DNA from: Mytilus edulis
Taxonomy: Eukaryota
DNA: 64,000 bases
Direction of reading: 5' to 3'
Assembly (NCBI RefSeq): GCF_963676685.1
Contig: NC_092350.1
Span: 3,038,001 to 3,102,000, forward strand
Shown: one piece after another, positions 4,142 through 50,530 of the stretch
How the letters are laid out: each line of letters starts with the position of its first letter
Position numbering within the stretch: position 1 is the stretch's first letter
The notes under the pieces: model-generated
The model's input: the letters and a program-made list of their open reading frames with translations, nothing else
Told to the model about the DNA's origin: nothing
Databases searched by the model: none
Program-made: the position numbers and the translations under genes

Positions 4142-4740
4142 TCACAACCAACCATTGCCAACTTGTCTGTTTGTTTCTAACTGGCTTCGTCTTTCATTGA
4201 AAATTTGGTCGAATCTGTTATTTCTGTCAATATTTGTTCTCCTGTCAATATTTGTATCAAATCTGTTTCTTCTATCAAGATTCGTATCAAATCTATTTCC
4301 AATTCTACCATCTAAATTTGACGTTTGTCCTAGTACGTTTAAAAAATCATTACCCAAACTATCAACGAATCGTCCACCTATTCTTTGGTTTCTATTTTGA
4401 AATCCACCATCTTGCCACTGAGAACCGCCCTGCCATCTATCTAAATTATCTCCCCTGCCGCTATTGCAAATGTCAATGTCACAGCCTCTACACCTCACGC
4501 CATGTTCAAATTCGATTGTTTCTTGTACACACTGTGGTGGTATTATCTGTAGAGTACACGGTTTGTTGCATTGAAGCAGTTTGTTGCTAGGTAGCACGGC
4601 ATGATCAGTGGGTATATGGATTGGATCTTTAACAAACCCATTGCCGTTTGATATATGGACGGGATCTTTCAGAAATCCATGATCCTGGGGTCTAACCACG
4701 GAAGTATGTTTGGTCTTTTTGTGATAGCCATAGCTGCGAC
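4142..4740 (-). CDS. Cluster gene 1, exon 2: secreted 6-Cys-module protein with RGD and an Asn/Arg/Asp/Gly-rich tail (217 aa spliced)
   Basis: Acceptor ttttgtAG at 4741-4742. Phase-1 junction reads G|GT-CGC-AGC (GRSYGYHKKTKHTS) in frame with ORF 4142-4699. AATAAA at 4019-4024(-). Paralogous to genes 2-4. Confidence 0.9.
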
Positions 4741-4817
4741 CTACAAAATAAAAATGTTATTTTATTTGTATTATTTAAATTATTCTAGCAGTGTTGATGT
4801 GACAATTCATATTTATA

Positions 4818-4842
4818 TGTGTGTGTGTGTGTGTGTGTGTGT
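4818..4842. repeat. (GT)n microsatellite in the gene 1 intron
   Basis: About 12 TG dinucleotides. Confidence 0.9.
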
Positions 4843-5242
4843 GAAATGGATTGTAAAACAATAGATGTACATATATGGTTATAATTAATGATAAACCGAT
4901 AAGTACAATCAGTGTGTCCGAAGCAGTCAAACGCCATCACTGTTGAGACGTTTGACACAATAAAACCTAAACTATTTTTTTTAATGTAACTTACACGAAA
5001 ATTCTCTATTTTTACTAGTGTCAACAGCGTTTAAAATATTTCTATAATTTTGTAGGTTATCAATGTTTTTCTTTTCATTTTTTGTTTGTTATCCTACGTC
5101 TACATTAATATTAAACAGACCAAAATAAGTATTATTTTTTTTTTCAAAATAACTTTCTATTATTTTTTTTTACACTACACGTGACTTCAATTTACATATT
5201 CACAAAATAAAACATTAACATTACAGATGTTGTAATTCATAC

Positions 5243-5297
5243 CTTGAACTGAGCATAGAGAGACAAATAGAAACGTGCAACAAATAAGTGACTTCAT
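5243..5297 (-). CDS. Cluster gene 1, exon 1: signal peptide MKSLICCTFLFVSLCSVQ(G)
   Basis: ATG at 5297, 55-nt coding exon, donor G|GTATGA at 5242, hydrophobic core ending VQG. Confidence 0.9.
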
Positions 5298-5344
5298 GTT
5301 AACTGTATATTGTAAACTGATACACAATCTACAAAACCATGTTT

Positions 5345-5603
5345 CTTTTATACCATACAAAATAAATGTCCTTAATCGTAACGTATACGCAGTGATTGTA
5401 TTGTAATGGATGAAAGTTAGTGTAAACGTCATTGAATTTGACAGACAATGACACCTATATTGTCATTGTAACATTTTTATGACATTTTTATGGATTACGG
5501 ACAACGATGAGCGAATACGGTATCAGTAATATGTAATGAGTGACGTATGAGATACAGTAACGTACTCTATGTAATGAGTGACGTATGAGATACAGTAACG
5601 TAC
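5345..5603 (-). promoter_or_regulatory. Gene 1 promoter: TATA box plus upstream motifs shared with paralogs
   Basis: TATAAAAG at 5345-5352(-). ACGTCA at 5426-5431. GCGAATACGGTATCA at 5511-5525 is identical to gene 2 (14309-14323). Confidence 0.7.
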
Positions 5604-8998: not shown

Positions 8999-9038
8999 CC
9001 TTACAATAAACCCTTCGTTCATTTTTACATTCATTCAT

Positions 9039-10735: not shown

Positions 10736-11099
10736 AAAATTCTTTTGTTTTTGAGGATATTTGCATTAATCGAGAGATAACCTCAACTTTGTTTTTTTAA
10801 CATACATTTATGTGTCAATTTTAGGTTTTATATGCCCATACAGGTTTCATACTTTTGATGGTCTGTTTTATTGATTATTCTTCTGTAGACAAAACAATAT
10901 TTCTTAGGATTTGTTATTAAATTATGTTCTCCAAGGGAAGTAATACAAACGTCATTAAATAATTTATCATACTTGAACTTTAATTATTTAAGAAAGTTTA
11001 ACAGATTTACTGTTCAATGGTTAAACATGTGTTTAGTATAACTATACATTTTTTTTACAGCTTAACATATTGTTTCATAGGAAAATTTGTGTACAGAAC

Positions 11100-11725
11100 C
11101 CATGTAGTCTTAGATGCATGATTGTTTTTATTAGTTGTTAGTGGTTTTTAACAAGCTGTCAGTAACTGCAAGTACTCTCAGATCTGTACGTTGTGTTTTT
11201 TGTTGTTGGGATATACAAGTACCCGGCCACGTCCACTCTGTGTAGTATTTCTATTGGTATCCATCTGATGAGTCAAGCCTTTTCAACTGATTTTCATACT
11301 TCGTTCTTATGTTGTTATGTTACACCACTGTCCCAGGTTAGGGGAGGTTTAGGATCCCGCTCATATGTTTACCCCCCCCCCCCGTCCACCCCCCCCCCCC
11401 CCCCACACACACACCACCACCACCACCACCACTACCACCACCACTACCACATTCTCTTTAAATGTGCCTGTCCCATATCAGAAGCCTGTAATTCAGTGGT
11501 TGTCGTTTGTTGATGTTTTACATATTTGTTTTTCGTTTATTTTTTATATAAATAAGGCCGTTAGTTTTCTTACTTGAATTGTTTTACATTTGTCATTTCG
11601 GAGCCTGACTATGCAGTAAGGGCTTTGCTCATTGTACGGTGACCTATAGTTGTTACTTTTGTGTGTCATTTGGTCTTTTGTGGGGAGTTGTCTCATTGGC
11701 AATTATACCATATCTTCTTTTTTTA
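11100..11725 (+). mobile_element. Interspersed repeat family A copy with an internal poly-C/(CAC)n expansion
   Basis: Family A motifs (GGATCCCGCT..ATGTTTA, TGTGCCTGTCCC, CAGTGGTTGTCGTTTG, GTCTCATTGGCAAT). Simple repeat at 11372-11450. Confidence 0.65.
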
Positions 11726-12243
11726 CATTAAAGTAAATATTGCCCTTGAACAGTTTTAACCATGAAAAAAAATGTCCGGTTGACACAATTTCATGGGGGA
11801 CATTTTTAAAACCTAGTAATGAACCTTATGCAAAGTTTGCCTACAAAACACTATATAAAAAATCTTTTAAAAAACTGTATGTTGATGTATATGTGTAGCG
11901 TTGGGTTAAGGTCTATTGAGCTTAAACTTAATCTAATTGTCATAACAAAATGGATGAAAACTTTAAACATCTAGGCAGTTTTGGCAATTTGAAACTTGGT
12001 ATGCAGTTTGGGTTTTGCTCATTGTTGAAGGCTGTAGGATGACCTATAATTGTTATATGTACGTCATTTACTCTATGGTGGAAAATTTCTTCTTGGCAAT
12101 CTTGCCAATCTGATTGTTTGTATGACAAAAACCAATAAGTAAGAAATAGATCTTTACCCGTTTATTGATTATATAAAAATTGTACAGCAAAATACTCTGG
12201 ATTTCTAAATGTTTTACAAAATACTCAAATCTTCACCACGTGA

Positions 12244-12863
12244 TCATAACCACCCACTTCCAACTTGTCTGTTTCTCCTGTCATTTAAGTTTCTATCTAA
12301 TCTGTTTCTTCTATCAAAATTTGTATCCTGTCTGTTTCTAAATCTACCACCTAAATTCGTGTTTTGTCTTTCATTAAAGAAATCACTACCTAAACTGTCA
12401 ACGAATTCTCCGCCTATTCTGTTGTTTAAATTTTGGTTTCTACCTCCACCTAAACTATCAACGAATTGTCCGCCTATTCTGCTGTTTAAATTTTGGTTTC
12501 TACCTCCACCTAAACTATCAACGAATTCTCCGCCTATTCTGCTGTTTATATTTCGGTTTCTGCCCCCATTTTGCCATTGGGAACCGCCCTGCAATCTATC
12601 TAAATTATCTCCCCTGCCTCTGTTGCATATATCAATATCACACCCTCTACACCTCACGCCATGTTCAAATCCAAATGTTTCTTGTATACACTCTGGTGGT
12701 ATTATCTGAAGAGTACATCCTACATCACAGTCAGGTAGTCTCTTACTTGGTAACACGACAGGTTCTTTAGGTATATGTACTTGATCTGTCGGGAATCCAA
12801 TATGATCCTTTGCCTTGACCACGTGAGCCCTTTTTGTCTTTTTTTGATAGCCATATGTCCGAC
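12244..12863 (-). CDS. Cluster gene 2, exon 2: 6-Cys module, RGD and 3 copies of the 20-aa repeat (224 aa spliced)
   Basis: Acceptor tttcAG at 12864-12865. Junction reads GRTYGYQKKTKRAH into ORF 12244-12822. AATAAA at 12161-12166(-). Confidence 0.9.
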
Positions 12864-13039
12864 CTGAAATGATAAATTAAGAAAAAAATGTAAGTCAAAA
12901 TATACATTTACATTTAGTATTACAAGTGTTAATATCTTTAATTTCGTTAATTATAAAAGAAATGGTAGATTCTCGTCAATGCTCTTCAACTTCGTACTTT
13001 ATTTGGCCTTTTTTTTTTTTTTAACTTTTTTGGATTCGA

Positions 13040-13083
13040 GCGTCACTGATGAGTCTTTTGTAGACGAAACGCGCGTCTGACGT
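13040..13083 (+). ncRNA. Type I hammerhead ribozyme with intact core, inside a short retrozyme/PLE-like insertion (~12976-13126) in the gene 2 intron
   Basis: GCGTCA-CTGATGA-GTCT tttgt AGAC-GAA-ACGCGCGT-C^TGACGT. Stem I is 6 bp, stem II is 4 bp, stem III is a minimal palindrome. Predicted GUC cleavage after 13077. Confidence 0.85.
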
Positions 13084-14057
13084 ATATATAGAATTTAGTC
13101 CTGGTATATATCTATGATGAGTTTATGTTCAATGATAAAGCTAGGAACAACGACGATTTCGCGAAGCTTTCGTACGTAGGCATGTACATTTGACGCTTGG
13201 TCTTCGGTAATATCATCGTATCGGACAGAGGAGTAATAACCCAAAAAAAAAAAAGTTTCAAAAGATGATTAATTTGAAAAACTCAATAAATGTAACATTA
13301 TTGTTAATTTTAGCATATATGTTATTAAGATTTCAAAGTATATTACTTAAGTGTTATACATGTTGAAACAATTGATATGGTGTTTAAACACAATCAATCA
13401 TTTATGTTTTGTCTTTTCTTTTCCTCGCAATAAAACATTGCGTTATTGGTCGGACTTTATAAGAGAATACATACATTGACTTGATTGTTTCATTATAATT
13501 ATTCGTTTTTCGAACGTATTCATTATTTATTGATTCATTAATTTCAACACAAATATAAAAAATGAAAGTAATTGAAAAATATTTATTAATTTTGAATCCA
13601 TAAAATTGAGTTTGCACATTCATTAATTAAATCAATTAATATATCACACTTTAAATTGAACTGGGGGAAGAAAAATATCCATGTTGTAGCCACATTTTTT
13701 TTATCGAATACAATTTAAATACAATTGTGGCGCGCTCGTAGAACGAAACATTTCATTTTAATATTTCCGTATAAAAGCGTATAATGCATAATCAAAATAT
13801 AGATTTTATTATTTGTTTTTGATTTTGTCTAATCAACGCAAATTGTCCAATTGTTATTTTGTTCCATTTTTATTTTTTAGTAACTCATCACATATATCTG
13901 AAACTTCTATTTATAGTAGTCTCAGTATGTATTAAAAATTATACAAAAAAATATATTTAACATTTCAAAATCTATTATGTTTTTTGTTTTTTTTTGTACA
14001 AATTATATGAATGAACTTTAAAGCCCGGATTTATATTAACTAAAAAGAAAATCATAC

Positions 14058-14112
14058 CTTGAACTAAATAGAGAGAAACCAAAATAAGCACAAAACAAAG
14101 AAGAGACTGCAT
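14058..14112 (-). CDS. Cluster gene 2, exon 1: signal peptide MQSLLCFVLILVSLYLVQ(G)
   Basis: ATG at 14112, 55 nt, donor G|GTATGA. Confidence 0.9.
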
Positions 14113-14155
14113 GTTCAATGTTTTAAAGTTATGTCCAATCTGCTAAACTTTCCTT

Positions 14156-14345
14156 CTTTTATACCTTATAAAATGTCCGTATTTAAACTTATTCTACGTT
14201 GATTGGATTATATTAGATGAAAATAAAGTGTGACGTCACGATATTTGACTGATAATGACACCTTAATTGCCCATATGTCATCTTTATTACTTTTTATGGA
14301 CACATTGGGCGAATACGGTATCAAAAATGTGTGTATAGTGACGTT
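14156..14345 (-). promoter_or_regulatory. Gene 2 promoter: TATA, CCAAT and a palindromic CRE
   Basis: TATAAAAG at 14156-14163(-). ATTGG at 14202-14206. TGACGTCA at 14232-14239. Confidence 0.7.
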
Positions 14346-15040
14346 CCATATATATATTTATATATATTTATATAGTAACCTACAACATTGGGTGTTCAAA
14401 ATCAACGTATGCTAGTCGTTTAATGTTTGTTTATTGTCTAAACTATCGTTATGTTTCCCCCGTGTTTTTTGTAAGTTTAAAATGCGAAACGTTCAAAAGA
14501 CGGGTTATAAATATAACCTCATATTTACCAAATTACCTTAACATTTAGTGTAAGTTAAACATTGACCAATGAAGTACAATAATGTTTTTTTCTCGAATCA
14601 AATATGTCAATTGGATAAATGTCTAAAGATTTTTCAATAATTGTATGCCTATACACTGGACTATGTCTTCATTCATTGCTATCGAGGCCCTATGAACTTT
14701 GACAACTACTGTTGTTTCTTTAATTTGTGTTCTTGTACTTGTATTGTTGCGTACCTTGAACAGCTTATACAAGAAGCAGTAACAGTGCTCTTAACAACGA
14801 GTAATTTCGTATTGTTTTGAATACATGTTAGTTTATTCCACATTGGCTAGAGTTATAAGGAAGGTATCAGATCTCACAAAACATGTTTAACCCATTCGCG
14901 TTTTTTGCGCATGTCCAAAGCAGGAATCTCTGGTCTTTGTTAGTCTTGTATGTTTTTATTGAAACTTAGGTTCATTTTGATGTTTCGGAAGTTAGTTTGA
15001 CATTTATTTTTGCTGAAATACTGCATATTAGTTAGGGTCC

Positions 15041-16610
15041 AGGCATTATCCTTCATCAAAAATTAGTTCATCGAAAATACCTCCTTATTTCAAAGACCAG
15101 TCTGTACCAATCATTTCTTATGCCTATACCAAACCTATTGCAACTCAAATATTCAATTGCAAACACGTTTTGCAGGATCTCAGTATTGACGACTACAAGT
15201 CTAAACCTCCTAATTGCACTTGTGCTAGTTCCCAATTCACATATAATCCGGCTGGCCACGTTATTACCGGTGACCTCAACATTGTTAATAACACTTTCCT
15301 ACGAAATGTGTTATCGATAGGTCCAAAATATCGAGGCCGAAATCGATCAATTGAAATACAACTTTGAAATTTTGATGAATTCAGTGAAGGATTATGCCAG
15401 GAAATGGGCTAAGCGTGAGAAAGAAGACGTAGACACTCTTTGCGAATGGATTAAGGCAGTGAGGTCGTTGATGCAAATCAGAATTAAGAAACTGAATGGG
15501 TCTATCTATGCTCAAGCTACGTCAATCTTTAAAGACCCAAATGTTGCAAAACACTTATCCTACCTTTATGACAAATATGTTGTTGTCCCCCACAGATAAA
15601 GCCCCAAACAACATCGTTTTTATGTGTAAAACTCATTACATTAACTGCTTGATAAACGAATTAGGTATATACTTGGAAACCCAACATATACCCCCATGAC
15701 ACTTACCAAAGAGGAAATCCTAGATAATCATAAATCTTTTCTATGTTCCTTTGGAGTTTCAACCAAAGATGATGAACTGGATCTTCCATCACCTTATTGG
15801 ATACCTAAACTGCATACGTGTCCTTACAATCAACGGTATATTGCTGGGTCTTCCAAGTGCTCCACGAAACCTCTAAATTATTAACATCTATGTTATCAGC
15901 AACAAAGACGGGCTTCAAAGTTTTTAATAAACTGCCTATTCTAGAGGTGGCGTGAATCAGATGTGGATACTTAAAAATTCCAAAGATATTTAGAGTTCAT
16001 ACAATCGTACTCTCTTTCATCTTGTAATAGTATTAAAACATTTGATTTTTCTACACTTTATACAAGTATTCCACATTCCAAACTAAAAGACAAATTGAAA
16101 GAGTTGGTATTGCTTTGTTTCATAAAAGAAAAATGACCAACAAAGATATAAGTATCTTGTCTTAGGAAGAATACATCCTACTTTGTAAAGGACCACTGTG
16201 GTTCAAACAAAAAATTCTCTGGAACTGACATTATCAAGATGCTTGATTTCTTAATTGACAACATATTTGTTACGTTCGGAGGACGTGTTTTTCAACAGAA
16301 TTCGGCATTCCAATGGGAACAAATTGTGCCCCTCTTCTTGCCGACTTGTTTCTTTATTATTATGAGGCTGACTTCATACATGAACTTCTTAGGAAGAAAG
16401 ATAAGAAGTAAGCAATATCCTTTAACTCTACTTTCCGCTATATAGATGATGTTCTTTCACTACATAATTCAAAATTTGGTGACTGTGTCGAACGCATCTA
16501 TCCAATTGAACTAGAGATAAAGGATACAACAGCCAGGTACAGTTAAGTCGGCCTCATATCTTGACTTACATCTAGAAATTGACAATGAGGGTCTATTGAA
16601 AACAAAATTT
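15041..16610 (+). mobile_element. Decayed Naiad-type Penelope-like retroelement (5'-truncated, 3' end deleted)
   Basis: Frameshifted ORF pieces: CxC linker PPNCTC...GHVITGD, DKAPNN, YWIPKLH, FDFSTLYTSIPH, GIPMGTNCAP-like and YIDD. Confidence 0.85.
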
Positions 16611-17272
16611 TGAACACCAAATCAATAATTGCGATGCTTTCACACATGAGTCTGCTGTCTACTACACACTTGTCAAGTGTGCTTACCTTTTAGAAGCCTA
16701 TTATCTAGGAACCAATGTGAATTTCGTTATTCAATCTTTTAACAATGTGGAAACTTGAGCACGCTGAGTATTAACAACAATGATTCAGAAAGTAAAAATA
16801 GAATTACAACATGAACAGAACAAAAAACCAGCAAAAATAGAATACCAACGAATAAATTATGTCAAAATAAATAAAAATGTACTTAATCTACATATAAATT
16901 GTAATAAAATTGATTGTAACAAATAGGGAAATTTACTTTGCCGGAAGCTTTTTTATTATTTCAGAATGTTTTGATTGACGTGTACTTTTTATAGACACTA
17001 TAATAAATAAATATGTGAAAAGAAATAATAATATTTTAATGCTTATGATACAAACAAAAACATGGTGTATGCATCTAAAATATATCTCACAAAGAATGGA
17101 AATATGGTGTTACAGCTCGTAAGGACTATTGGAGGACTGGCTTTGCTAAAGCATTCGCATTCGAAATAACATAAATGATTCCAATTATACTGTACATATA
17201 TGCGTATTTTCAATCAATTTCTCTTCAGTGATGTGCGAGGCCAAACTATTTCTAGAGTTATCACTTATGATA

Positions 17273-17547
17273 AGCACTTGTCTAAGAGCAAGTGCGTGTT
17301 GTACTCGGTATATTATGATATCGCGAATAAACATGCCGTTTTGAGCCTTTGAGCCTCCTTATTATTCAAACTTTGTTTTAGAAACAGATTTAGAAATCAA
17401 TCCTCTAGTGGACTACATGTCCCCTCTCTAATCCGATTGTATCAACAACCAAGAAGCCAGTACATCGGCACTGGCATAACAATACAGATAGTGATGTGAT
17501 ATCATAATATACCAGGTACAATACACACTGGCTCCTAGACAAGTGCT
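17273..17547. mobile_element. ~275-bp MITE with ~50-bp imperfect TIRs
   Basis: AGCACTTGTCTAAGAGCAAGTGCGTG... pairs with ...CACACTGGCTCCTAGACAAGTGCT. Paralogous copies at ~27111 (left arm only) and ~40205-40477. Confidence 0.55.
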
Positions 17548-19190
17548 AATAAAAAGTCAAAGTTCTGGAAAAATTGGAAAAAACAAGTATTATATCTTAA
17601 CATTTCAAGAGTGCAAACACTACGAACATATCAAATCGATTATTTAACGTGGAATGGCCATACATTTCTACATTATTAACGACTAGTATTGCAATTACAG
17701 CAGCTATAATGATATCACTGTTTAATGGTTGAGATGTACATTTTGACAATTAATACCTCTGCATTGTTGCAACAAAATCAAAATAACAAAAATACAAAAC
17801 TCCGTTGAAAATCCATAATGGTAAGTTGGTCATGAAATGGCAAAATCAAAACCTCGAACACAATAACCGCATGGATAACAACTGTCATATTCCTGACATG
17901 CTTTGATGAAGACATTTTCTGGTGTAGAAAACGCAAAAAACGTCAAAATATTTAAAATTCATACATGGATACAAACGTTTTAAAAGAAAAGAAACATCTC
18001 TTTATAACATGCATGCGTCCTTATTGCTTCTCTTGGTTATCAGGACCACTCGAAGCCGAATGTTTGAATATTTTTCAATTGATTTCTATAGTCCTTTCTT
18101 GATTTGAAATGTTACACAACTGTCGCAGGTTTAAGGGGGATCCCGCGAACATGTTTAACCCCGCCACATTCTGTATGCATTTGACTGTCCCAAGTCAGGA
18201 TCATGTAAGTCAGTGGTTGTCGTTTATTGATGTATTAAATAATTTTTTTCGTAAAGCTTTTGGACATAAAAGGACGTTACATTTCTTGTTTGATTTGTTT
18301 TACATTTGTCATTTTATAGATAATAATGCGTAATTGGCTTTGCTCAATGTTGAAGGCCTTATTGTGACCTATAGTTGTTAATTTCTATTTCATTTGGTCT
18401 CTTGTGGAGAGTTGTCTCATTTGCAGTTATACCACATCATATTTTTTAAATCAAAGTAAATATTGTCCGTCAACAGTGACAAAATGTTCGGCGGACACTA
18501 TTTCATGGGGGACATTTTGAAATCCTACAAATGAACCTTATGCCCAGTTTGAGTACTTGCTTTTCATGTATTTAGTTTTGGTGATATATTTGTGATTTGT
18601 CTCATGCTTAGTTCGTTTCTGTGTGTGTTACATTTTAATATTGTGTCGTTGATCTCCTCTTATATTTAATGTGTTTCCCTCAGTTTTAGTTTGTAACCCG
18701 GAATTGTTATTTTCAATCGATTTATGAGTTTCGAACAGCGGTATACTACTGTTGCCTTTATTTGCCTACAAACCACTTCATAAAAAATCTTTAAAGAAAG
18801 TATGTGGATGTATATGTGTGTGTCGTTGGGTTAATGTCTATTTCGTTTAAACCTAATCTAATTGTCATAAACAAATAAATTTACCCATGTACTCAAATTG
18901 AAGACTTTAAACATCTAGGCAATCTTGGCACTTTAAAACTTGTTATGCGGTATGAGGTTTAATTCATTGTTGAAGGCTTTAGGATGACCTACAATTATTA
19001 TCTTTTCGTCATTCAGTCTATGGTGGAAAATTCTTTATTTGCAATATTACCCAATCTGATTGATTTTATAACAAAACCCAATAAGCAAGAAATAGATCTT
19101 TACCCGTTTATTGATTATATAAAAATTGTACAACAAAATACTCTGGATTTCTAAATGTTTTTACAAAATACTCAAATCGTCACCACGTGA

Positions 19191-19930
19191 TCATAACCAC
19201 CCACTTCCAACTTGTCTGTTTCTCCTGTCATTTAAGTTTATATCTAATCTGTTTCTTCTATCAAAATTGGTATCCTGTCTGTTTCTAAATCTACCACCTA
19301 AATTCATGTTTTGTCTTTCGTTAAAGAAATCACTACCTAAACTGTCAACGAATTCTCCGCCTATTCTGCTGTTTAAATTTTGGTTTCTACCTCCACCTAA
19401 ACTATCAACGAATTCTCCGCCTATTCTGCTGTTTAAATTTTGGTTTCTACCTCCACCTAAACTATCAACGAATTCTCCGCCTATTCTGCTGTTTAAATTT
19501 TGGTTTCTACCTTCACCTAAACTATCAACGAATTGTCCGCCTATTCTGTTGTTTAAATTTTGGTTTCTACCTCCACCTAAACTATCAACGAATTCTCCGC
19601 CTATTCTGCTGTTTATATTTCGGTTTCTGCCTCTATTTTGCCACTGGGAACTACCCTGCAATCTATTTAAATTATCTCCCCTTCCTCTATTGCAAATATT
19701 AACATCACACCCTCTACACTTCACGCCATGTTCAAATCCAAATGTTTCTTGTATACACTCTGGTGGTATTATCTGAAGAGTACATCCTACATCACAGTCA
19801 GGTAGTCTCTTACTTGGAAACACGACATGTTCTTTGGGTTTATGTACTTGATCTGTCGGGAATCCAATTGGATCCTTTGCCTTAACCACGTGATCCCTTT
19901 TTATCTTTTTTTGATAACCATATGTCCGAC
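19191..19930 (-). CDS. Cluster gene 3, exon 2: 6-Cys module, RGD and 5 copies of the 20-aa repeat (264 aa spliced)
   Basis: Acceptor tttcAG at 19931-19932. Junction reads GRTYGYQKKIKRDH into ORF 19191-19889. AATAAA at 19107-19112(-). Confidence 0.88.
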
Positions 19931-20009
19931 CTGAAACGATAAATCGAGAAAAGAATGTAATTCAAAATAAATTTACATTTGCATGTAGTTATACACGTTT
20001 TATCTTTAA

Positions 20010-22897: not shown

Positions 22898-22952
22898 CTT
22901 GAACTAAATAGAGAGAAACCAAAATAAGCACAAAACAAAGAAGAGACTGCAT
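22898..22952 (-). CDS. Cluster gene 3, exon 1: signal peptide MQSLLCFVLILVSLYLVQ(G)
   Basis: ATG at 22952, 55 nt, donor G|GTATGA. Identical to gene 2 exon 1. Confidence 0.88.
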
Positions 22953-22995: not shown

Positions 22996-23190
22996 CTGTT
23001 ATACCTTATAAAATGTCCGTATTTAAACTTATTCTACGTTGATTGGATTATATTAGATGAAAATAAAGTGTGACGTCACGATATTTGACTGATAATGACA
23101 CCTTAATTGCCCATATGTCATCTTTATTATTATATTTTATGGACACATTGGGCAAATACGGTATCAAAGATGTGTGTAGAGTGACGTTCC
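22996..23190 (-). promoter_or_regulatory. Gene 3 promoter with variant TATA box (TATAACAG)
   Basis: Paralog of the gene 2 promoter. TGACGTCA at 23072-23079. One substitution in the TATA box at 22998. Confidence 0.65.
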
Positions 23191-29632: not shown

Positions 29633-29687
29633 CTTGGACTGAATACAGAGAAACCAAAATAAGCACAAAACAAAGAAGAGACTGCAT
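29633..29687 (-). CDS. Cluster gene 4, exon 1: signal peptide MQSLLCFVLILVSLYSVQ(G)
   Basis: ATG at 29687, 55 nt, donor G|GTATGA. Confidence 0.9.
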
Positions 29688-31276: not shown

Positions 31277-33219
31277 TCAGCGATACAAAACAATATATAC
31301 CTTTTTCTAATAATTTACATGTCTTTATACAAAATTTTACTTGTAAAACAATAAGCCATTGCCATAGTTATTTGTTTAAATACATACATGTACATGTATA
31401 ACCTTTTTCTTCATCATATTTTCACAGATACCATTAATAAATTGATACCAAATTGTAAGTATAGAACAGGGAATTTCATTCCAGCTTTATAATCTATTTA
31501 TGCAAATACTTAATTTTTGGTTTGTGTTTTTTTTTATTTTTTTATTTTTTTTTTATTTGTTATTTGCTTTTTGTTACTTTAGTTTTGCTTGTTCTCTATG
31601 CTTTCTTGCATGATTATCTGCAATATATTGGCAGACACATATCAATGTAAATGCTAATTCTGATTTATATATATACATATACTCATTTTCCAATTTGCTG
31701 AGTTAAAATTTTTGCCTTTATTATTCATTTATATGTTTATTCTCTGCTGCTTATACATGCATAGTTTTTGCTATTGCTAGTTATTTACTTTTATTCTGAA
31801 CTGCTATAATGTGCTTAATGCTGTGGTTGCTATATGCTTTACTTTATTTTATCAAATACAGACTGACACAAATGAGTTGAAGTTAGAATATGTAAAGGAC
31901 AGACCACTTTTAAAGTGATGTTTATATTTCAAATTTAAGAATGAGACGCTTGTTTAAAATTATCTTTCCTTGGTTGTGTTTATGGTACATGTACATTATA
32001 ATGAAATGACATTACTGTAGTAAGTTTTACACAATCTTTGCTGAAACTTACTCATTAATAAGATATGCATACACACACTCAGAATGTGCAGTCTATGTTT
32101 GACTGTTAGATAGTTTTGTTAGTTTTCAAGATATATTGATCATGCGTTAATTTGATTTACACTGTGATACAGAAGTTTTGCTACATATATATAGTGACAC
32201 TACATTTGAAGTCAGTCAGAGTTTTTAATTTTTTGAAATCATCTCTCAACTACGCACTGTTCTTTTAAGCAAGAAATATTAATATTTAGATAAATCTTAT
32301 ATATTTACAACTGCACCTCATAATATCATAAAGAATATTGATCTTTAATGGTACAAATGTATCAGAGATATATTGAGTATAAAACATCTCTGCCTTCTTA
32401 AATAGACATAGGATTATATAAATCTGTGTATTTGACTTTGGAGTTTTAATACATAAATACAAAGGACAAACATAGAAATTCCAATATCTACATGTAGTCA
32501 ATTGAACAACTCTGACAGTCTTGAAATATTGTACATAATAAGCTTATTTAGAATGCATCTAATAGTTCATTTAACTAAAACTGTTTTTCAAAATGAATGA
32601 ACGCGTTATAAAGACAACATCTTATGATAAAAATATTGACAAATCTGACTGGATCAGATTTGAAGGCAGAACAATGGACATTTGTATACTTGTGCTTCTT
32701 GTGTGATCTTTTCTTTTTTGCCATAACCACATATAATGGAAAAGTATCTGTGTGTGTTCGAAAGAATGACAGTAAGAAAATTAAATGTTATATGAAATTA
32801 TAGGAATGAAATAATCTTTCAAAATATGTACATAACATGAACTATACAGATATTCACTGTTGGGTGCTCAAATTAAATTTCCATCTGAATCCAATGTATT
32901 TATTGAAATTTCTTCTGAGTTATCTCCCATAGACCATTTAGAGTGACTATCCTATACAACAACAGTGAATGTCTCAGAGTGCAAATTTAGTATTTGATTT
33001 TAATGTTGGACTTTGTCTTGCTATTGTATTTTATGTTTTCTTATATATGTATTTATTGTAAATTACAAATATGTCTTAAGGTTTCACAGATCTGGAAAAA
33101 CTATACAGTTTTAAAGGAAAAGAACTTTAAAAGTCCCTTGATTTCACAAATTTCATGGTATATTTATGTATACTCACTAATCATTAGAGTTATAAATATT
33201 GATAAAGCTAAACGCATGC

Positions 33220-36200
33220 ATGAAGGGTGATATTCTTAAAATAATTTCTTATAATTGTCAAGGTCTGTATACAAAGGAGAAACGGAGAGATGTTTTGAAC
33301 TATTTAAAGTCGAAGAATTTTAATGTATATTGTCTTCAGGACACACATTTAACAGAACAAGATGAATTAAATATTAAAAATCAGTGGAAGGGAGAATGCC
33401 TTTTCAATTCATTTACATCCAATCAGAGAGGGGTGGCCATCTTTTTTAATGAAAACTTTGATCTTCAAATTCACAAAGTTAAAAAAGATGAGGGTGGAAA
33501 TCTTCTTGGATTGGACATTACAATTGAAGAACAAAGAATTACTTTAGTAAATATTTATGGGCCAAATGTAGACACTCCTTGCTTTTATCAAAAGGTGGCT
33601 GACATTATTGAGGAATTTGATAACCAATCTTGTATTCTTTGTGGAGATTTTAACCTCATTCAAAGTTTTAATCTTGATACCCATAATTATGTTAATATCA
33701 ACAACCCAAAGTCTAGAGAAAAAGTATTACAGCTAATGGAAGACTTTAATCTAGTTGATCCATTTAGAGAATTATACCCCAATCTGAAAAGATTTACTTG
33801 GAGGAAAAAAAAACCCTTTAAACAATCTCGTTTAGATTTTTTTCTGATTTCTGATAATATTTTTCACTTTGTTAATGATGTTAAAATTAATAATAGTTAC
33901 AGGTCTGATCATTCACCTGTGGTCTTTTCTTTCAAGATTAATGAATTTATAAAAGGCAGAGGCCTTTGGAAGTTTAATAATTCTCTTCTTCATGATACTG
34001 ACTATGTTAAAGAGATAAAAAACCTCATAAATATAGTAAAAGAACAATATGCTGTCAAGATATATAGAGATGAAATTTTACAAAATATTGACAACTCTGA
34101 AATTGAATTTACTGTTGATGACCAGTTATTTTTAGAAACTCTACTCACAGAAATACGTGGCAAAACTATTTCATATGCCTCTTATAAAAAAAAGGCGGGT
34201 ATAAAAATTGAAAATGAAATTATTTCAAAATTAAAACAATTAGAAGAAAATGCTCTAACAGTAGAAAATCTGGAAGAGATTGATCAGAAAAAAGCAGAAC
34301 TTAAAATGTATAGACAAAAGAAGGTTCAGGGACAATATGTTAGGTCAAGAAGTCAGTGGATTGAAGAAGGAGAAAAACCTACTAATTTTTTTTTAAATCT
34401 AGAGACTAGAAATTATATTAATAAGACTATTCAAAAACTTACTTTAGAAAATGGTGTTATAGTGGAGGAACAAAAAGAAATCTTAAATCAGACAAAGGTG
34501 TTTTATGAAAAACTTTATAGAAAACAAGATTGTTTAAAAAAGGTTGATTTAACACGGGAATGTTGTTATGACGAGATACCAAAGCTTAGCGAGGATGAAA
34601 AGCAATTATTGGAGGGAAATATTAATTTTTCTGAATTAACTGCAGCATTAAAGAGGATGAAAAATAACAAAAGTCCTGGATCTGATGGTTACACTGCAGA
34701 ATTTTTTAAAATTTTTTGGATTGATATTGGTAAATTTGTCCTTAGATCTATAAATTTTGGGTATGGGAAGGGCCAAATGTCTGTCACCCAGAGGCAGGGA
34801 GTGATTACATGTATTCCAAAAGATGGTAAACCAAAACAATTTCTTAAAAATTGGAGACCTATTACTTTACTTAATTCTACATATAAATTGGCATCAAGCT
34901 GTATAGCAGAGAGAATAAAATCTGTTTTGTCAAAATTAATAAGCTCGGATCAAACTGGTTTTGTTCCAGGTAGATATATAGGCGAAAATTGTCGATTGAT
35001 ATATGATATTCTACATTTTACTGAAGAAAATAATATTCCTGCTGATTGATTTTGAGAAGGCATTTGATTCCATATCTTGGTCATTTCTTTATGATACATT
35101 AAGATATTTTAATTTTGGTGAATCTGTTATATCCTGGGTTAAAACCTTCTATAACAATATAACAGCTGCGGTGACACAAAACTGCTGTCTGTCAGAATTC
35201 TTCACTATAGAGAGAGGCTGTAGACAGGGAGATCCTTTATCCCCTTATATTTTCTTGCTATGTGCAGAAATATTAGGCATTTTGGTAAGAAATAGTAGGG
35301 AGATAAAGGGTATTACTATAGATGATACAGAGTTTGTACTTTCTCAATATGCAGATGATACATCCTTGATATTAGATGGCTCGCCAGAATCGCTCGATGC
35401 ATCTCTTCGTGTTCTCCAATTGTATGCTGAAATCTCGGGACTTAAGATAAATATAGAAAAAACAAGTGTTATTTGGATAGGTAGCAAAAAACATAGTCAG
35501 GATCAAATTTGTGTAAAGTGGGGATTGAAATGGGGCTCCAGTACATTTAAACTACTTGGAATTACTTTTTCAGTCGACCTAGATAGAATGATTAATTTAA
35601 ATTATAGGCCAGTTTTAGATAATATAGACAACACTTTGAAAAAATGGTCAAAACAGTATCTCACCCCCTTTGGAAAGATTACCATTTTAAAAACTTTGGT
35701 CATAGCTAAATTAAATCATCTGTTTCTATCTATCCCTAGTCCAGATGAGAATATGTTACTTAATTTAACAAATAAAATGTATGCTTTTATCTGGGATAAT
35801 AAACCAGATAAGGTCAAGCGAGATCTTTTATGTCAAGATTATTATAAGGGTGGTTTAAAAATGCTAAATTTAAAAGCATTTATACAGGGACTAAAACTTA
35901 CATGGGTGAGACGTTTGTATAATTCGAATTCAAAGTGGGTGAGATTAGTCTCTATTGTGGAGCAAATAAATTTTATTGAAATAAGTTATATTGGGCCTAT
36001 TAAAAGGTCATCAAATAAATTTTGGCAAGAAGTTTTTGATGCTTGGAAAACCCTTAATCAAATTAGAAAACCAAGATGTATTGATGAAATTCTATCTTAT
36101 TCTTTATGGGAGGTAGAAAACTTTAAAATTGGTGGTTCAAGAGTCTACTATAAAAACTGGGCAAATGCGGGAATTTGGACAGTGCAAGATTTGTTAGATG

Positions 36201-36991
36201 ACCAGGGCAAAGTTATGTCATTTCAAAATTTCCAACAATTATATCAATTTAGGCCAAATATTTTACATTATTATGGAATAGCACACTCGCTTAATGAGTG
36301 GTTAAACACGATAAATATTGAAGTAAACGAGAGAAGAATTCATGCAATAATACCTTTTAACATAAGTATCTTTTTTGAATCAAAAAAAGGTTCAAAAGAC
36401 ATGTACAACATATTGAATGAAAAATATATTACATTTGCTGCAAAGGAAAAATGGGAGAACCATCTTAATATGACTGGTATTAACTGGAAAAAAATACACA
36501 CTTCGTGTACAAAATATAGTAAAAGCACTAAGCTTAGCTGGTTCCAATATAGAATTATCCATAGAATTTTGGGAACTAATTCACTACTTTACAAGATGAA
36601 AATAAATAGTAACAACATGTGTACATTTTGTAAAGAAGGACCAGAGACCATAGAACATTTATTTTGGAGCTGTCCGATGGTCGCCAGTCTCTGGCATGCA
36701 CTAAACATTTGGATTTTTGAAATGACAAATATTGAACTGCCTTTGAATATTATGATTATTTTATTTGGTATCTTAGAAAATGTTAAATTGAATTTTGTTA
36801 AAAATAAGATTATTCTTTTTTCAAAATACTACATCTACCGAACAAAACTACAAGAAGTTTTGCCAAATTTAAATGCTTTAAAAAACTATTTAAAGGAACA
36901 CTTGAATTTAGAAAAATACATTTCATTTAAAAACCTCTCTGTAGAGGAATATAACAAATACTGGAGTCCCTGGGCCCCTATCATAGAATAA
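33220..36991 (+). pseudogene. LINE ORF2p (APE endonuclease, RT, CCHC) with a single frameshift at ~35040
   Basis: SYNCQGL, LQDTH, GDFN, SRLDFFL and SDH (APE). KSPGSDG, WRPITLL, DFEKAFD, GCRQGDPLSP and YADD (RT). CTFC...HLFWSC. Frame changes between NIP and LIDFEK. Confidence 0.9.
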
Positions 36992-37815: not shown

Positions 37816-37859
37816 ATGCCAGACGCGCGTTTCGTCTACATCAGACTCATCAGTGACGC
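37816..37859 (-). ncRNA. Type I hammerhead ribozyme (intact core, one stem I mismatch) in a retrozyme-like fragment at ~37782-38015
   Basis: Reverse complement reads GCGTCA-CTGATGA-GTCT gatgt AGAC-GAA-ACGCGCGT-C^TGGCAT. Confidence 0.8.
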
Positions 37860-46760: not shown

Positions 46761-48814
46761 TTACTGTTGAGTAATGGGACCATGAAAACTATTTGAACTT
46801 GCCGGTAAAGCTTGGTTTGTAACAGGATCAATAAAACCACCGGTATTTGATGTTTGCACATTGCTTTGGCCTTGATTCGCAAATCCTTGGACAGATGCCC
46901 ATGGGTTTCCGGCGGTTAATGTAGGTCCTGGAAAGTTTCCATTTGAAGGCGGCTGACCTGGAAAATTTCCATTTAAAGGCGGTTGACCTGGAAAATTTCC
47001 ATTTAAAGGCACTTGACCTTGAATGTTTCCATTTAAAGGCACTTGACCTTGAATGTTTCCATTTAAAGGTACTTGACCTTGAAAGTTAGAATTAATGCCT
47101 GGCACTGGAGGCAACTGGTTCAGGAACTGAGAAATTTGACCATTTGGGTTAGGTCCTAAATTTTGGTTTGATACTGGTTGTTGCATTCCAGCCATAAAAG
47201 GATTGGTATTTTGTCCAAACCCTTGGAATCCTTGTGGTACAAAACCCGGGAATCCTTGTCCCTGTAGATTTGTATTTACTCCATTGTTAGGAAAACCTTG
47301 TTGAGTCTGTGGTATTCCACCGGTAGGAAACTGAGGCATAGGGAATTGTCCAAATGCTGGCACCTGCTGCTGACCTCTTAATTGTTGTATTTGAAATTCT
47401 AATGCAGCTTGTTGTCCTCTGAGTTGGTTCAATATCTGCTGATTTTGGACCAATTGCATTTCAGGGGATTGACTTCCACCTTGTAAATTTGGAGGCATAA
47501 AACCCGGAGTTTGAGGCCAAATGTTATTATTTTGCTGACCTTGAAATGGTGACGGGATATTTTGTAAAAACGGATTCTGCATTGTATTTTGATTCATCAA
47601 TGGATTCTGAACATTTTCCGTTAAACTTGAATCAACTGGTGGTAGTAACAAGTTTGCATTGCTGCTGTCAAATCTAACTCTGTTGGCGAATTCATTGTCA
47701 GATGGAGGCACATTAAGAACAGCTAGAGGATCTCTTATTTGTTGTCCAACGTCGGTTGTTATAATTGGTTGAACTGGTGGTGAATCTGGTAGTGCAGCAG
47801 GTGGCGGCAAGTCTGGAAGAATTGCAGGTAACAGAGAATCTGGTCGTGAAATAGGGGGCGGGAAATCTGGTAGTATTGTACGTAGCGGTGAATCTGGTAG
47901 TGCAGCAGGTGGCGGCAAGTCTGGTTGAATTGCAGGTATTTGGGAATCTGGTCGTGCAGCAGGAATCGGAGAAACTGGTCGTGGTGGTGGATCAACCGGT
48001 GTATCGTTTGGTCCGACACTGTCTGCTGGTAACCGAACTGACGAACCTGGAAAAGGACTTAAAGGTTCAACGTTATCTTGAAACAATCGCACTGATGAAT
48101 CGAGTGTAGGGTCACGACTCACAACGTTGTCTTGGCGCAGCCGTACGGAATTATCAAGTAAAGATTCCTCATTTCTTAAGATATCTGGGGACACTAGAAT
48201 GGGTGAATCAGGAAAAGAACCTATACTTCCAATGTTGTTTTGTGGCAGCCGAACGGATAAATCAGGGAAAGAGTCTCGCCTTCGAATGTTGTCTTGGGGA
48301 AGCCGAACAGATGAATCAGATAAAGTACCTAGATTGCCTAAGCTGTCTGAATGTAGTCGATCGGACGGTTCTGGAGAGATATCTGTATGGTGAACATTAT
48401 CAAAAGGCCTTCGAACTGACATGTCTGGGAAATGATCTCGAATAGAAGGTCTTCTTTCCTCTTTTTCTGCATGGATTTTAACAACTTTGACTGTTTTTTG
48501 TTGAATCGGTGTAATTTTTTTCTGTTTTATTGAATGTAATTTTTTCACCAAACGTTTTAAATCCGTAACCCTCTTTGAACATTTGTTATTATCACATCCT
48601 TGACATTTGTAACCGTTTTTATAGAAATAGGTTTTCATCCGGCATTCGTCAGGAATAAATTCTTGTTCGCATGCCACAGGTGGACATGGACCTGATGACT
48701 TCTTATGTGTGAAATCTTCGAGGAGACGTTTCTTACGTGAGAAATCATCCAAAAGACGTTTCTTCACTCTCGATCTGAACACTTTCTTGTTTTTATCATA
48801 CCGATACGAATGGC
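46761..48814 (-). CDS. Cluster gene 5, exon 2: large secreted modular protein (702 aa spliced) with the 6-Cys module and Pro- and Gln/Asn/Gly-rich repeats
   Basis: Acceptor tttcAG at 48815-48816. Phase-1 junction reads G|GC-CAT (GHSYRY). Uninterrupted 2-kb ORF. AATAAA at 46654-46659(-). Confidence 0.92.
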
Positions 48815-50226
48815 CTGAAATCAAATAAATATTGAGGTTAGAACTATTTTAAAAATACATGTACTAAATCAATCCAATCGTTTTACCTAAAAAGTTGAAT
48901 AATATATAAACAAAATAAAAAGTTTAATAAACATATAAGTTTCTGACTGAATTGTATGCTGCTTTGACTTCTAAAGCTTAGTAAGCTTCTAACGGTCTCC
49001 TTGTCGTGTTTTGTGTTTTCTCGCCTCGTCAAAGTCGCGGAGATGTGTAGTTGTATTACACAATCAATTTTAACGAAAAAGTGTTGTTGTGATCAATCAA
49101 TTTAAACAAAAAAAGTGTTGTTGTGATCAATCAATTTCAATCAGCATGATAGTTGTGTGAAAGGATGAATGAAAGTTTCTGTATGTAAATATGTGTTTGT
49201 TTAGATTTATCTATCTGGTTTAAGAACGACCCAGTGATTGAGTTAAAAAAAATTAATTTTAATTTTGTATAACATTTAGCACGTGTAATTTCAAAGAAGA
49301 ATATTGGACCACGCAATCTCAATGATGATCCTTTGACATTAAAACATTTGTTGTTTCACATGTTAAAGATTGTAATCATACCATTTTAAGGGGAAACACT
49401 TACAATAAGCTAATGCTAGTTGGTGTGTTATTGCACTAGCATTAACATATATCATTATTAGTGTTGTCACTTTGACACATTCCCCATTTCCATTCTCAAT
49501 TTTATCATTATTATGGATTTTATATATCAGTCTCCTTCATCATGGTTCATTGACGTTTGCATATTTACATATTAAAGTTTGTGATCATATGAGGAAATTT
49601 TTTCAAGAGATAAAACAAAAAGTGCAGATAAATCAGTTTAAGAGGAAACCCTATAGTAAGTTAATGATGTATCTAGTTGTATACGTATTTGTATATTATT
49701 TGGTCCTGTACCCTAGGGTAAAGTTTATGGACTTTGAAAAGTTCTATAGTTTACATAAACTCATCATACCAGGCTTAAACTCGTGTAAGAATGATGGCAG
49801 TTTCATTTTACCATTTAATATTAAAACAAAATTCAAGAAAGTCTTCTGTGTTACTTGTTTATTATAAAGAAATACAATTACTATTTATTAAACGGAATAG
49901 AAGTGATAGACAAATGAACATAATTAATAAAATATTAAACGACAAAAAGTACTGATCTGAAAAGTCTCGGGGATTACGGAAAGATAATCCAACTAAAATT
50001 CAACCAAACAAAAACTAATTTCCCAAACCTATCTTTTATTTTTTAATCTTATTTTGTCTGAAAGTCAAATATAATAACGTAATAAGATTTGTTATTATTT
50101 TATTATTGTTTTACTCTTTTTCTACATAACTATTATTATATATAATAAGAAATTGTCTTACACGTAGAGTGTGAAAATAGTTACGAATACCTGATAATTG
50201 ATTGCTTTTAAAAAATTTCAACTCAC

Positions 50227-50281
50227 CGTTTACAAGATATATATGAATCAACAAAAGAGTGATAATAGCCGATGTCTTCAT
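50227..50281 (-). CDS. Cluster gene 5, exon 1: signal peptide MKTSAIITLLLIHIYLVN(G)
   Basis: ATG at 50281, 55-nt exon with the same length and phase as genes 1-4, donor G|GTGAGT. Confidence 0.88.
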
Positions 50282-50333
50282 TATTACTTCCCAAACACCT
50301 TTACGATAATGGTTATCATTTGAACTTTTTTTC

Positions 50334-50530
50334 GTTTTATATCGTCATCTTCGCGCCATCGTATAGTATGACAATGAAATATTTCAATTCAATCAACAGA
50401 CGTATTTCATTGGTCAATGCATCTTAAACGTCAAGTGGTATCATCATTGACTATCATCGTTTTGACAGAGGATAACAACCGTACAAATTGATATATAATT
50501 AGCATGTAAATAATGACATATTTATGATAA
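50334..50530 (-). promoter_or_regulatory. Gene 5 promoter
   Basis: TATAAAAC at 50334-50341(-). ATTGG at ~50409. AAACGTCA at 50426-50433. TTTGACAGA at ~50461. Confidence 0.6.

What the first reader, a model, noticed from the sequence alone, without database searches (positions are those of the whole stretch)
4142..50341. Five-gene tandem cluster of secreted proteins sharing an unassigned six-cysteine module
Seen: all five minus-strand genes have a TATA box 44-53 nt before the ATG, a 55-nt signal-peptide exon ending in V-[QN]-G, a phase-1 intron, and an exon 2 starting G-[RH]-[ST]-Y-x-Y followed by a Lys-rich stretch. All carry C-x3/4-C-x4-IP-x-[EQ]-C-x3-T-x2-[FY]-x2-G-x-[RK]-C-x-GCD-x3-C (gene 1 CNKPCTLQIIPPQCVQETIEFEHGVRCRGCDIDIC; gene 5 CPPVACEQEFIPDECRMKTYFYKNGYKCQGCDNNKC). 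The ORF track misses the spliced signal exons and the link between gene 5 and genes 1-4. Known: signal peptide plus small disulfide domain plus low-complexity repeats is typical of mollusc shell-matrix, byssal and mucus proteins. The Cys spacing is only loosely antistasin-like. Inference: an undescribed family in which a common disulfide head is attached to interchangeable disordered tails, possibly co-expressed parts of one extracellular material.
Basis: partly seen in the sequence, partly recalled or inferred. Interest (0 to 1): 0.9.

Follow-up and report, generated by a model that had tools for sequence, protein, structure and literature searches.

The report
Bivalve six-cysteine secreted protein family
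Five neighbouring blue-mussel genes encode secreted proteins that share a small six-cysteine domain, so far seen only in bivalves and assigned to no known family, joined to unrelated repetitive tails; the genes are real and already in RefSeq as 'uncharacterized protein', but their function is untested.

Summary
The window is Mytilus edulis. All five minus-strand genes have a 55-nt signal exon, a GT..AG phase-1 intron, and an exon 2 that starts G-[RH]-[ST]-Y-x-Y. Each mature protein has exactly six Cys, all in one 35-36-residue module. The spliced models of genes 1, 3 and 4 are identical to RefSeq 'uncharacterized' proteins. Gene 5 orthologues in M. trossulus and M. coruscus carry the same signal exon.

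A profile built only from non-Mytilus bivalve modules finds exactly these five ORFs among 1020 in the window (E 1e-9 to 3e-13).

M. edulis has at least 23 copies, 21 of them on this chromosome. There are 61 representative proteins in 1.84 billion. Every named one is a bivalve except one plant NLR, taken as spurious. They occur as module-only peptides, arrays of 2-16 modules, or a module plus varied low-complexity tails.

No Pfam, PDB-sequence or fold match was found, and no paper mentions them.

Function is unresolved because tissue data were out of reach. An extracellular-material role is the best guess but is inferred. This is a new family of a familiar molluscan kind and of moderate interest.

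The parts
5243..5297 (-). Gene 1 exon 1 (signal peptide, 55 nt); TATAAA at 5347-5352
   Evidence: the spliced product is identical to XP_071122914.1
4142..4740 (-). Gene 1 exon 2 including the stop; six-Cys module at about 4466-4570
14058..14112 (-). Gene 2 exon 1 (signal peptide); TATAAA at 14158-14163
12244..12863 (-). Gene 2 exon 2; module at about 12625-12729; three 60-nt (20-aa) repeats at 12388-12568
22898..22952 (-). Gene 3 exon 1; the TATA box here reads TATAAC; the intron is 2967 nt
   Evidence: the product is identical to XP_071122917.1
19191..19930 (-). Gene 3 exon 2; module at about 19692-19796; five 60-nt repeats at 19335-19633
29633..29687 (-). Gene 4 exon 1; TATAAA at 29733-29738
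   Evidence: the product is identical to XP_071181710.1
27986..28725 (-). Gene 4 exon 2; module at about 28487-28591; five 60-nt repeats at 28130-28430
50227..50281 (-). Gene 5 exon 1 (signal peptide); TATAAA at 50336-50341
   Evidence: M. trossulus and M. coruscus orthologues start with the same signal peptide followed by GHSYRY
46761..48814 (-). Gene 5 exon 2; module at about 48579-48686; P/Q/N-rich tail with 30-nt and 54-nt repeats at 46927-47087 and 47779-47979
   Evidence: Contigs of two RNA-like runs cover 46825-48815 and leave the intron empty apart from a repeat at 49462-49506

Best explanation
This is a tandem cluster of five expressed-type, two-exon genes in Mytilus edulis. It belongs to a bivalve-wide family of secreted proteins that nobody has characterised.

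Shown or read from the sequence: each product has a cleavable signal peptide, then a short basic Tyr/Lys/His peptide (G-[RH]-[ST]-Y-x-Y-x-K-K), then a compact module of about 35 residues that holds all six cysteines of the mature protein. After that comes a long repeat-built, probably disordered tail. In genes 1-4 the tail is R/N/G/D-rich with pI about 11-12. In gene 5 it is P/Q/N-rich with pI 5.7.

Inferred: the module folds as a three-disulfide unit and acts as a binding or anchoring head. The tails supply bulk, charge and multivalent weak contacts. [quoted passage not shown]

Shown: the cluster grew by recent tandem duplication (genes 2-4) and by gain or loss of 60-nt repeat units.
For: Gene anatomy and reading frames.

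Identity to public models: genes 1, 3 and 4 equal RefSeq proteins. Orthologues exist in M. trossulus, M. galloprovincialis, M. coruscus and M. californianus, including the signal exon of gene 5.

Transcription of gene 5: exon 2 is present and the intron absent in contigs of two RNA-like runs. Fourteen small, transcriptome-like runs from seven studies hold about half or more of its words.

Independent homology: a profile of 24 modules from non-Mytilus bivalves hits only the five exon-2 ORFs of the window, with E from 1e-9 to 3e-13.

Conservation: all six Cys are invariant in 30 aligned sequences and a Gly is nearly invariant.

Structure: the module alone, folded with 30 sequences, gives pLDDT 82.5 with a beta-hairpin. 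In the full-length model only the signal helix is confident and the tail scores about 30.

Composition: exactly six Cys per mature protein, all in the module; tail composition and pI as stated.

Tail turnover: 60-nt repeats occur in 3 versus 5 copies at 93-95% match. Genes 2-4 are 87-95% identical in DNA across promoter, intron and flank.

Modularity: the same head occurs with other tails, alone, or in arrays of 2-16.
Against: There are no tissue, proteomic or localisation data.

Tyr is scarce (2-5 per protein), unlike DOPA-type foot proteins.

Relatives occur in oysters and unionids, whose adults (general knowledge) make no byssus. That argues against a byssus-only role.

Small module-only relatives look more like defence or signalling peptides.

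Disulfide pairing is inferred from secretion and the even Cys count, not shown. The CxxxC...CxxC layout could also bind a metal.

The module was not confidently folded in the full-length run with a shallow alignment.

Two raw RNA runs showed almost no gene 5 reads.
Confidence: 0.5

Rival explanations
1. These are defence or mucosal effector precursors. The cationic N-terminal peptide plus the six-Cys module would be the active antimicrobial or toxin-like unit. The tail would be a pro-region or carrier, as in mussel mytilin, myticin and CRP-I precursors.
For: The genes share a signal exon, a small Cys-rich domain, tandem clustering and copy-number change. Module-only secreted peptides of 62-72 aa exist in unionids. 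A six-copy cluster of short forms lies at C7:75.89-75.93 Mb in this genome. The head is basic, with pI 8.3-9.5.
Against: The module is conserved rather than hypervariable. The tails are far longer than the head, themselves basic in genes 1-4, and show conserved motifs up to the C-terminus. No conserved dibasic cleavage site lies between head and tail. No Pfam defensin, mytilin or myticin match appears at E <= 10.
Confidence: 0.17
2. The module is a protease-inhibitor-type domain, functionally like antistasin, Kazal or WAP units. Such domains also occur singly, in long tandem arrays, and fused to matrix regions.
For: The range of architectures matches: single units, arrays of 2-16, and fusions with tails. 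Protease-inhibitor domains are common in mollusc shell matrices (PMC3896809).
Against: No match to any inhibitor family in Pfam, in PDB sequences or by fold. The most conserved loop, I-P-x-E-C, is invariant-like, whereas reactive loops usually vary.
Confidence: 0.1
3. The module is an extracellular metal-binding (zinc-knuckle-like) unit rather than a purely disulfide knot. It would cross-link a material through metal coordination.
For: The layout is CxxxC ... CxxC followed by D-x-D. The only matches are weak and sub-threshold, to zinc ribbons or fingers: PADR1 at E 1.8, zf-AN1, zf-WIZ, and PDB 6tly at E 0.44. A paralogue carries an HHHH run inside loop 1. A 2026 paper reports Zn-finger-like repeated globular domains in the plaque protein mefp-12 of M. 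edulis (PMC13022425).
Against: All these matches are below significance. Secreted six-Cys domains are normally oxidised. The mefp-12 sequence (PV698367) was not available, so any relation is untested. No gene with five or six modules plus a coiled coil turned up in the genome-wide module search.
Confidence: 0.1
4. These are prohormone or signalling-ligand precursors, with the repeats processed into peptides.
For: A signal peptide and repeated 20-aa units are present, with RR pairs in the C-terminal part of genes 1-4.
Against: There are no dibasic sites between the 20-aa repeats and no Gly-amidation signals. Repeat number varies freely between paralogues. Gene 5 has a 600-aa P/Q/N-rich tail.
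Confidence: 0.04

Closest known systems
[quoted passage not shown]
   Same: They share a signal peptide, a small Cys-rich or basic folded part, and fast-evolving repeat-built tails. They are lineage-restricted and tandemly duplicated. The relatives with 10-16 modules separated by Pro/Thr/Ser-rich linkers recall the layout of lustrin A (from memory).
   Different: No sequence relation to any named matrix protein was found. Presence in a shell or other matrix proteome is not shown.
Mytilus cysteine-rich peptide families (mytilins, myticins, MgCRP-I; PMC4558851)
   Same: Secreted, six or more Cys, and multigene tandem clusters in Mytilus.
   Different: The Cys spacing differs (C-x3-4-C-x8-C-x12-C-x2-C-x4-C). 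The module is conserved rather than hypervariable. Long tails follow it. The distribution is bivalve-wide rather than mussel-specific. There are no Pfam hits.
Antistasin-like and other small disulfide inhibitor domains
   Same: A domain of about 35 residues and six Cys that occurs singly or in long arrays.
   Different: No hit to Antistasin, Kazal, WAP, TIL, VWC or any other Pfam model at E <= 10.
mefp-12 plaque protein of M. edulis with repeated 'Zn-finger-like' globular domains (PMC13022425)
   Same: A mussel secreted protein with repeated small Cys-containing globular domains, predicted by AlphaFold, within an extracellular material.
   Different: mefp-12 has a central His-rich coiled coil and five or six domains with conserved His. 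Its sequence could not be compared here, and the paper reports it as restricted to Mytilidae.

Membership tests
The unnamed bivalve six-Cys module family (defined here) | Six invariant Cys spaced C-x3-4-C-x8-C-x12-13-C-x2-C-x4(6)-C, with [IV]-P before Cys3 and a Gly before Cys4; a significant match to a profile built without the sequence under test | tested here: met
   A profile of 24 non-Mytilus modules hits the five exon-2 ORFs only, with E from 1e-9 to 3e-13. Invariant columns are listed.
The unnamed bivalve six-Cys module family (defined here) | A secreted protein: an N-terminal signal peptide on its own exon, followed by a phase-1 intron | tested here: met
   Shown for the five genes. 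The C10 paralogues have the same structure, with a 55- or 58-nt exon 1. AF2 predicts a helix at residues 2-17. No SignalP run was possible; the signal call is heuristic.
Antistasin family (Pfam PF02822) | A match to the family profile and its Cys pattern | tested here: not met
   hmmscan against Pfam-A at E <= 10 returns no antistasin hit for any of the five proteins, nor for the multi-module relatives.
Zinc-ribbon or zinc-finger folds (PADR1, ZZ-like) | A significant profile match; metal ligands; an intracellular context | tested here: not met
   PADR1 scores E 1.8 and 8.8 bits against a cut-off of 25.1. PDB 6tly scores E 0.44. The proteins carry signal peptides. Metal binding itself cannot be tested with these tools.
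Mussel foot (DOPA) proteins | High Tyr content (DOPA precursor) and foot-gland expression | tested here: not met
   Tyr is 2-5 residues per mature protein of 198-683 aa. Foot-gland expression cannot be tested here.
Shell matrix proteins | Identified in a shell proteome and expressed in mantle | not testable with these tools
   No paper holds their accessions or motifs. Supplementary tables were not held.
Mytilus AMP families (mytilin, myticin, defensin, MgCRP-I) | The family-specific Cys array or profile | tested here: not met
   No Pfam match. The Cys spacing differs from the MgCRP-I description in PMC4558851 (abstract).

The most novel reading that the evidence does not exclude
The module is a previously unrecognised, bivalve-specific protein fold that serves as a common 'head' for a whole chromosome-7-centred superfamily of phase-separating or gel-forming secreted proteins. 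The head anchors each protein (by disulfide exchange, metal or ligand binding) in one bivalve biomaterial such as periostracum or shell matrix, byssal plaque or mucus. The swappable tails tune the material's properties.
Probability: 0.25. Interest if true: 0.65.

Novelty: new member of a known kind. Interest (0 to 1): 0.45.

Why it matters
Bivalve biomaterials (shell, periostracum, byssus, mucus) are built from lineage-restricted secreted proteins, and most of these are still 'uncharacterized'. This work defines a small domain without a Pfam, PDB or literature match. Apart from one plant NLR taken as spurious, every named hit is a bivalve, from the three subclasses Pteriomorphia, Palaeoheterodonta and Heterodonta. 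The domain occurs alone, in arrays of up to 16, and fused to at least five unrelated kinds of low-complexity tail.

That gives annotators a new domain model. It gives materials and immunity researchers a defined set of candidate genes. It also offers a clean case of tail swapping and repeat-number evolution on a fixed head.

It does not overturn any current view. The kind of protein is familiar, and the function is still open.

Tried and rejected
Pfam scans found nothing for the five proteins or for ten relatives. Only one plant NLR, taken as a false positive of the profile search, had domains.

Other searches that gave nothing:
- The PDB sequence profile search gave only E >= 0.44.
- Foldseek against PDB gave no match at E <= 0.001.
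- VIA-align wide gave no Z >= 2.
- The ESM Atlas gave no usable hit for gene 4 or for a 16-module relative.

AlphaFold2 on full-length gene 4 (as RefSeq protein P0001) gave pLDDT 34.5. Even the module was not confident with that shallow, Mytilus-only alignment.

Nine literature searches found nothing that describes these proteins. They used accessions, UniProt ids, LOC ids, short motif strings and topic words. No supplementary file was held for the three papers tried.

Read laying on gene 5 showed no splice joint. The contigs are fragmentary. One X6 contig ends at 48815, one base past the predicted acceptor, where the genome's base equals the last base of exon 1, and it leaves 3 letters unplaced. 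Two raw RNA runs had depth of 2 or less. Run, sample and tissue names were coded, so no tissue could be assigned.

The Logan contigs that hold gene 1-like proteins therefore could not be inspected.

The joined (spliced) models were built only inside scripts, to check frame and length and to compare exactly with database proteins. Searches used exon 2 by reference, or database proteins.

A last word-index search with a full-length family alignment added no named relatives.

Rejected readings:
- Chance ORFs or TE-derived ORFs, because the genes are conserved across species and match RefSeq models.
- Antistasin membership.
- mefp-12 identity for any gene in this window, because no coiled coil and only one module is present.
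Full report
**What is in the sequence.** The window is AT-rich (GC about 0.29-0.41). It matches Mytilus edulis proteins at 100%. In the tools' own genome it is C7:3,038,001-3,102,000.

Each has the following features:
- an ATG-initiated 55-nt exon 1 encoding a typical signal peptide;
- a GT donor and an AG acceptor preceded by a pyrimidine-rich tract;
- a phase-1 split Gly codon;
- a single long exon 2 ending in a stop.

The products are 217, 224, 264, 264 and 702 aa. TATAAA begins 51-60 nt before the ATG in genes 1, 2, 4 and 5. In gene 3 the box reads TATAAC. AATAAA follows each stop by 78-137 nt. Introns are 502, 1194, 2967, 907 and 1412 nt.

After the predicted cleavage site (V-Q-G or V-N-G) each protein starts [RH]-[ST]-Y-x-Y followed by Lys-rich residues. 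All six Cys of each mature protein lie in one 35-36-residue stretch.

**Are the genes real?** The spliced products of genes 1, 3 and 4 are letter-for-letter identical to RefSeq XP_071122914.1, XP_071122917.1 and XP_071181710.1, all named 'uncharacterized protein'. Gene 2 is 97% identical to an older M. edulis model, CAG2239540.1.

Orthologues exist in M. trossulus, M. galloprovincialis and M. coruscus. Gene 5 has orthologues in four Mytilus species. The M. trossulus and M. coruscus models begin with the same signal peptide followed by GHSYRY. The automatic names 'R3H domain-containing protein 2-like' and 'histone acetyltransferase p300-like' are probably low-complexity artefacts.

In two other assemblies the gene 5 orthologue and the gene 1/2/4-type proteins report the same longest-contig length. 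This suggests, but does not prove, that the linkage is conserved.

For gene 5, 14 small, transcriptome-like runs from seven studies hold 44-67% of the sampled words of exon 2. In the two such runs that were laid, contigs cover 46825-48815 and leave the intron empty, apart from a short repeat at 49462-49506. No contig bridged the intron, so the junction itself rests on annotation and conservation. Two raw RNA runs had next to no reads. No tissue could therefore be assigned.

**Is gene 5 related to genes 1-4?** Yes, at the protein level only. BLASTP gives E = 2e-8 against gene 4 and 9e-6 against gene 1, confined to the module. There is no DNA similarity.

An independent test supports this. A profile HMM built from 24 modules of non-Mytilus bivalves was searched against all 1020 stop-to-stop ORFs of the window. 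It hit exactly the five exon-2 ORFs. Gene 5 scored best at 2.7e-13, and genes 1-4 scored 7e-11 to 1e-9.

Genes 2-4 are recent tandem copies, 87-95% identical in DNA across promoter, exon 1, intron and 3' flank. Gene 1 is an older copy, 69-79% identical. The 20-aa repeat of the tail is a 60-nt tandem array with 3 copies in gene 2 and 5 copies in genes 3 and 4, at 93-95% match.

**How wide is the family?** A profile of eight modules was run against 1.84 billion representative proteins. It gave 61 hits at E <= 1e-3 and 21 at E <= 1e-10.

Every named hit but one is a bivalve:
- Mytilus species;
- Pecten maximus and Ylistrum balloti;
- Crassostrea and Magallana species, and Saccostrea echinata;
- Pinctada imbricata;
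- Potamilus streckersoni and Sinanodonta woodiana;
- Ruditapes philippinarum and Mactra antiquata.

The exception is a plant NLR, which is probably spurious.

By architecture, the 61 hits split as follows:
- 22 have one module plus a tail longer than 25 aa;
- 13 are module-only secreted peptides of 62-120 aa;
- 13 have 2-4 modules;
- 8 have 10-16 modules separated by Pro/Thr/Ser-rich linkers, and in these the last loop reads C-x2-C-P-x-W-[RK]-x-x-C.

Full-length alignment of single-module members from scallops, oysters, pearl oyster and mussels shows shared features beyond the module. These are a G-R-x-Y start after the signal peptide, a D-R-W-Q...W-Q-N stretch after the module, and a C-terminal N-[SG]-W motif (GNGWL, NSWASPGF, NSWATSF).

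In M. edulis itself there are at least 23 module matches. Twenty-one lie on the same chromosome piece, at 3.04, 14.3, 35.87-35.88, 38.67, 42.97 and 75.89-75.93 Mb, and two lie on C10. They include:
- an N/Q/W-rich-tailed gene that starts GHRYHSY;
- a three-module gene;
- His-rich two-module genes with an HHHH run inside loop 1;
- six short module-only genes within 34 kb;
- one gene with the module at the C-terminus, after an N/M/G-rich region.

The C10 paralogues have the same signal exon and phase-1 structure.

**Is the module a known domain?** None was found.
- Pfam-A at E <= 10 gives no family for genes 1-2 and only sub-threshold noise for genes 3-5. The best match on the module is PADR1 zinc ribbon at E 1.8.
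- Two relatives with 11 and 16 modules have no Pfam hit.
- A profile search of PDB sequences gives E >= 0.44.
- AlphaFold2 on the module with 30 diverse sequences gives mean pLDDT 82.5 and a beta-hairpin at residues 25-34.
- Foldseek and VIA-align over 48,161 chains find no match. For a 45-residue domain this is weak evidence either way.
- The ESM Atlas gave nothing.
- No paper in the library holds the accessions, UniProt ids, LOC ids or motif strings.

The antistasin resemblance is not supported.

**How it most likely works.** Three things are shown or read directly from the sequence. The proteins carry signal peptides. The Cys count is even and confined to one conserved module. The tails are repeat-built, compositionally extreme and poorly modelled: R/N/G/D-rich at pI 11-12 in genes 1-4, P/Q/N-rich at pI 5.7 in gene 5, and pLDDT about 30.

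The rest is inferred. The module would be a three-disulfide folded head that binds or anchors. The tails would be disordered, multivalent polymers. The proteins would be parts of a secreted material or coating. Bivalve-wide distribution argues against a byssus-only role and fits shell or periostracum matrix, or mucus.

I put about 0.5 on this reading taken as a whole. The structural and family part is close to certain. The functional part is perhaps 0.4-0.5.

The rivals are a defence-peptide-like function (0.17), a protease-inhibitor-like function (0.10), an extracellular metal-binding knuckle (0.10) and a prohormone (0.04).

A 2026 paper reports repeated 'Zn-finger-like' Cys/His globular domains in the M. 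edulis plaque protein mefp-12 (PMC13022425). No gene with five or six modules and a coiled coil appeared in the genome-wide search.

**Novelty and score.** The gene models are public but unnamed. The domain has no assigned family, structure or literature. Secreted Cys-rich head plus low-complexity tail is a familiar molluscan theme. I rate this a new member of a known kind and give it interest 0.45. It is a solid, useful family definition with an open function, not a surprise to specialists.

**Constraints.** Joined spliced sequences were used only inside scripts and were not sent to search tools.

Noticed in passing
window 13040-13083 (+) and 37816-37859 (-): Two type I hammerhead ribozyme matches (RF00163). 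The one at 37816-37859 scores 34.6 bits against a gathering score of 34. The one inside the gene 2 intron, antisense to the gene, scores 33.3 bits, just under gathering, with E 3.4e-6 in the local search. They probably belong to Penelope-like retroelement tails.
   Followed up: partly
window 49462-49506 (gene 5 intron): A short element of about 45 nt has enormous depth in all four runs laid. Word depth is 11,000-20,000 in the contig runs, and thousands of raw RNA reads continue into unlike sequence on both sides. It looks like the conserved core of a very abundant, transcribed repeat.
   Followed up: no
window 56395-62231: An 80-bp satellite with 72 copies at 90% match. It coincides with the GC-richer block that shows strong negative GC skew.
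   Followed up: no
window 33199-36991 (+): A LINE-like retrotransposon lies between genes 4 and 5: endonuclease plus reverse transcriptase plus zf-RVT in two overlapping ORFs. Further RT fragments occur at 24918-25418 and about 41.9-43.0 kb.
   Followed up: partly
window 22998-23003: The TATA box of gene 3 reads TATAAC, where genes 2 and 4 have TATAAA, in an otherwise 87-95% identical promoter. Whether gene 3 is expressed at a lower level is unknown.
   Followed up: no
window 4445-4453, 12604-12612, 19671-19679, 28466-28474 (minus strand, approximate): An R-G-D tripeptide follows three or four residues after the last Cys in genes 1-4 and in the C10 paralogues (C-N-[RS]-G-R-G-D-N-L-D-R). It is absent from gene 5 and from most relatives in other bivalves. 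It could be an integrin-type motif or a by-product of the R/G/D-rich composition.
   Followed up: no
G000:C7:75,892,708-75,926,569 (L014-L016): A second tandem cluster holds six short module-only genes (Y-L-N-R-G-C-P-x-L-x-C ...), some with a seventh Cys.
   Followed up: partly
G000:C7:38,670,733-38,678,693 (L017, L018) and C7:14,328,876 (L019): His-rich two-module paralogues carry an HHHH run in loop 1 and H-rich tails. One gene has the reversed order, with an N/M/G-rich region first and the module last.
   Followed up: partly
window 1731-2216: A 23-nt tandem repeat with about 21 copies.
   Followed up: no
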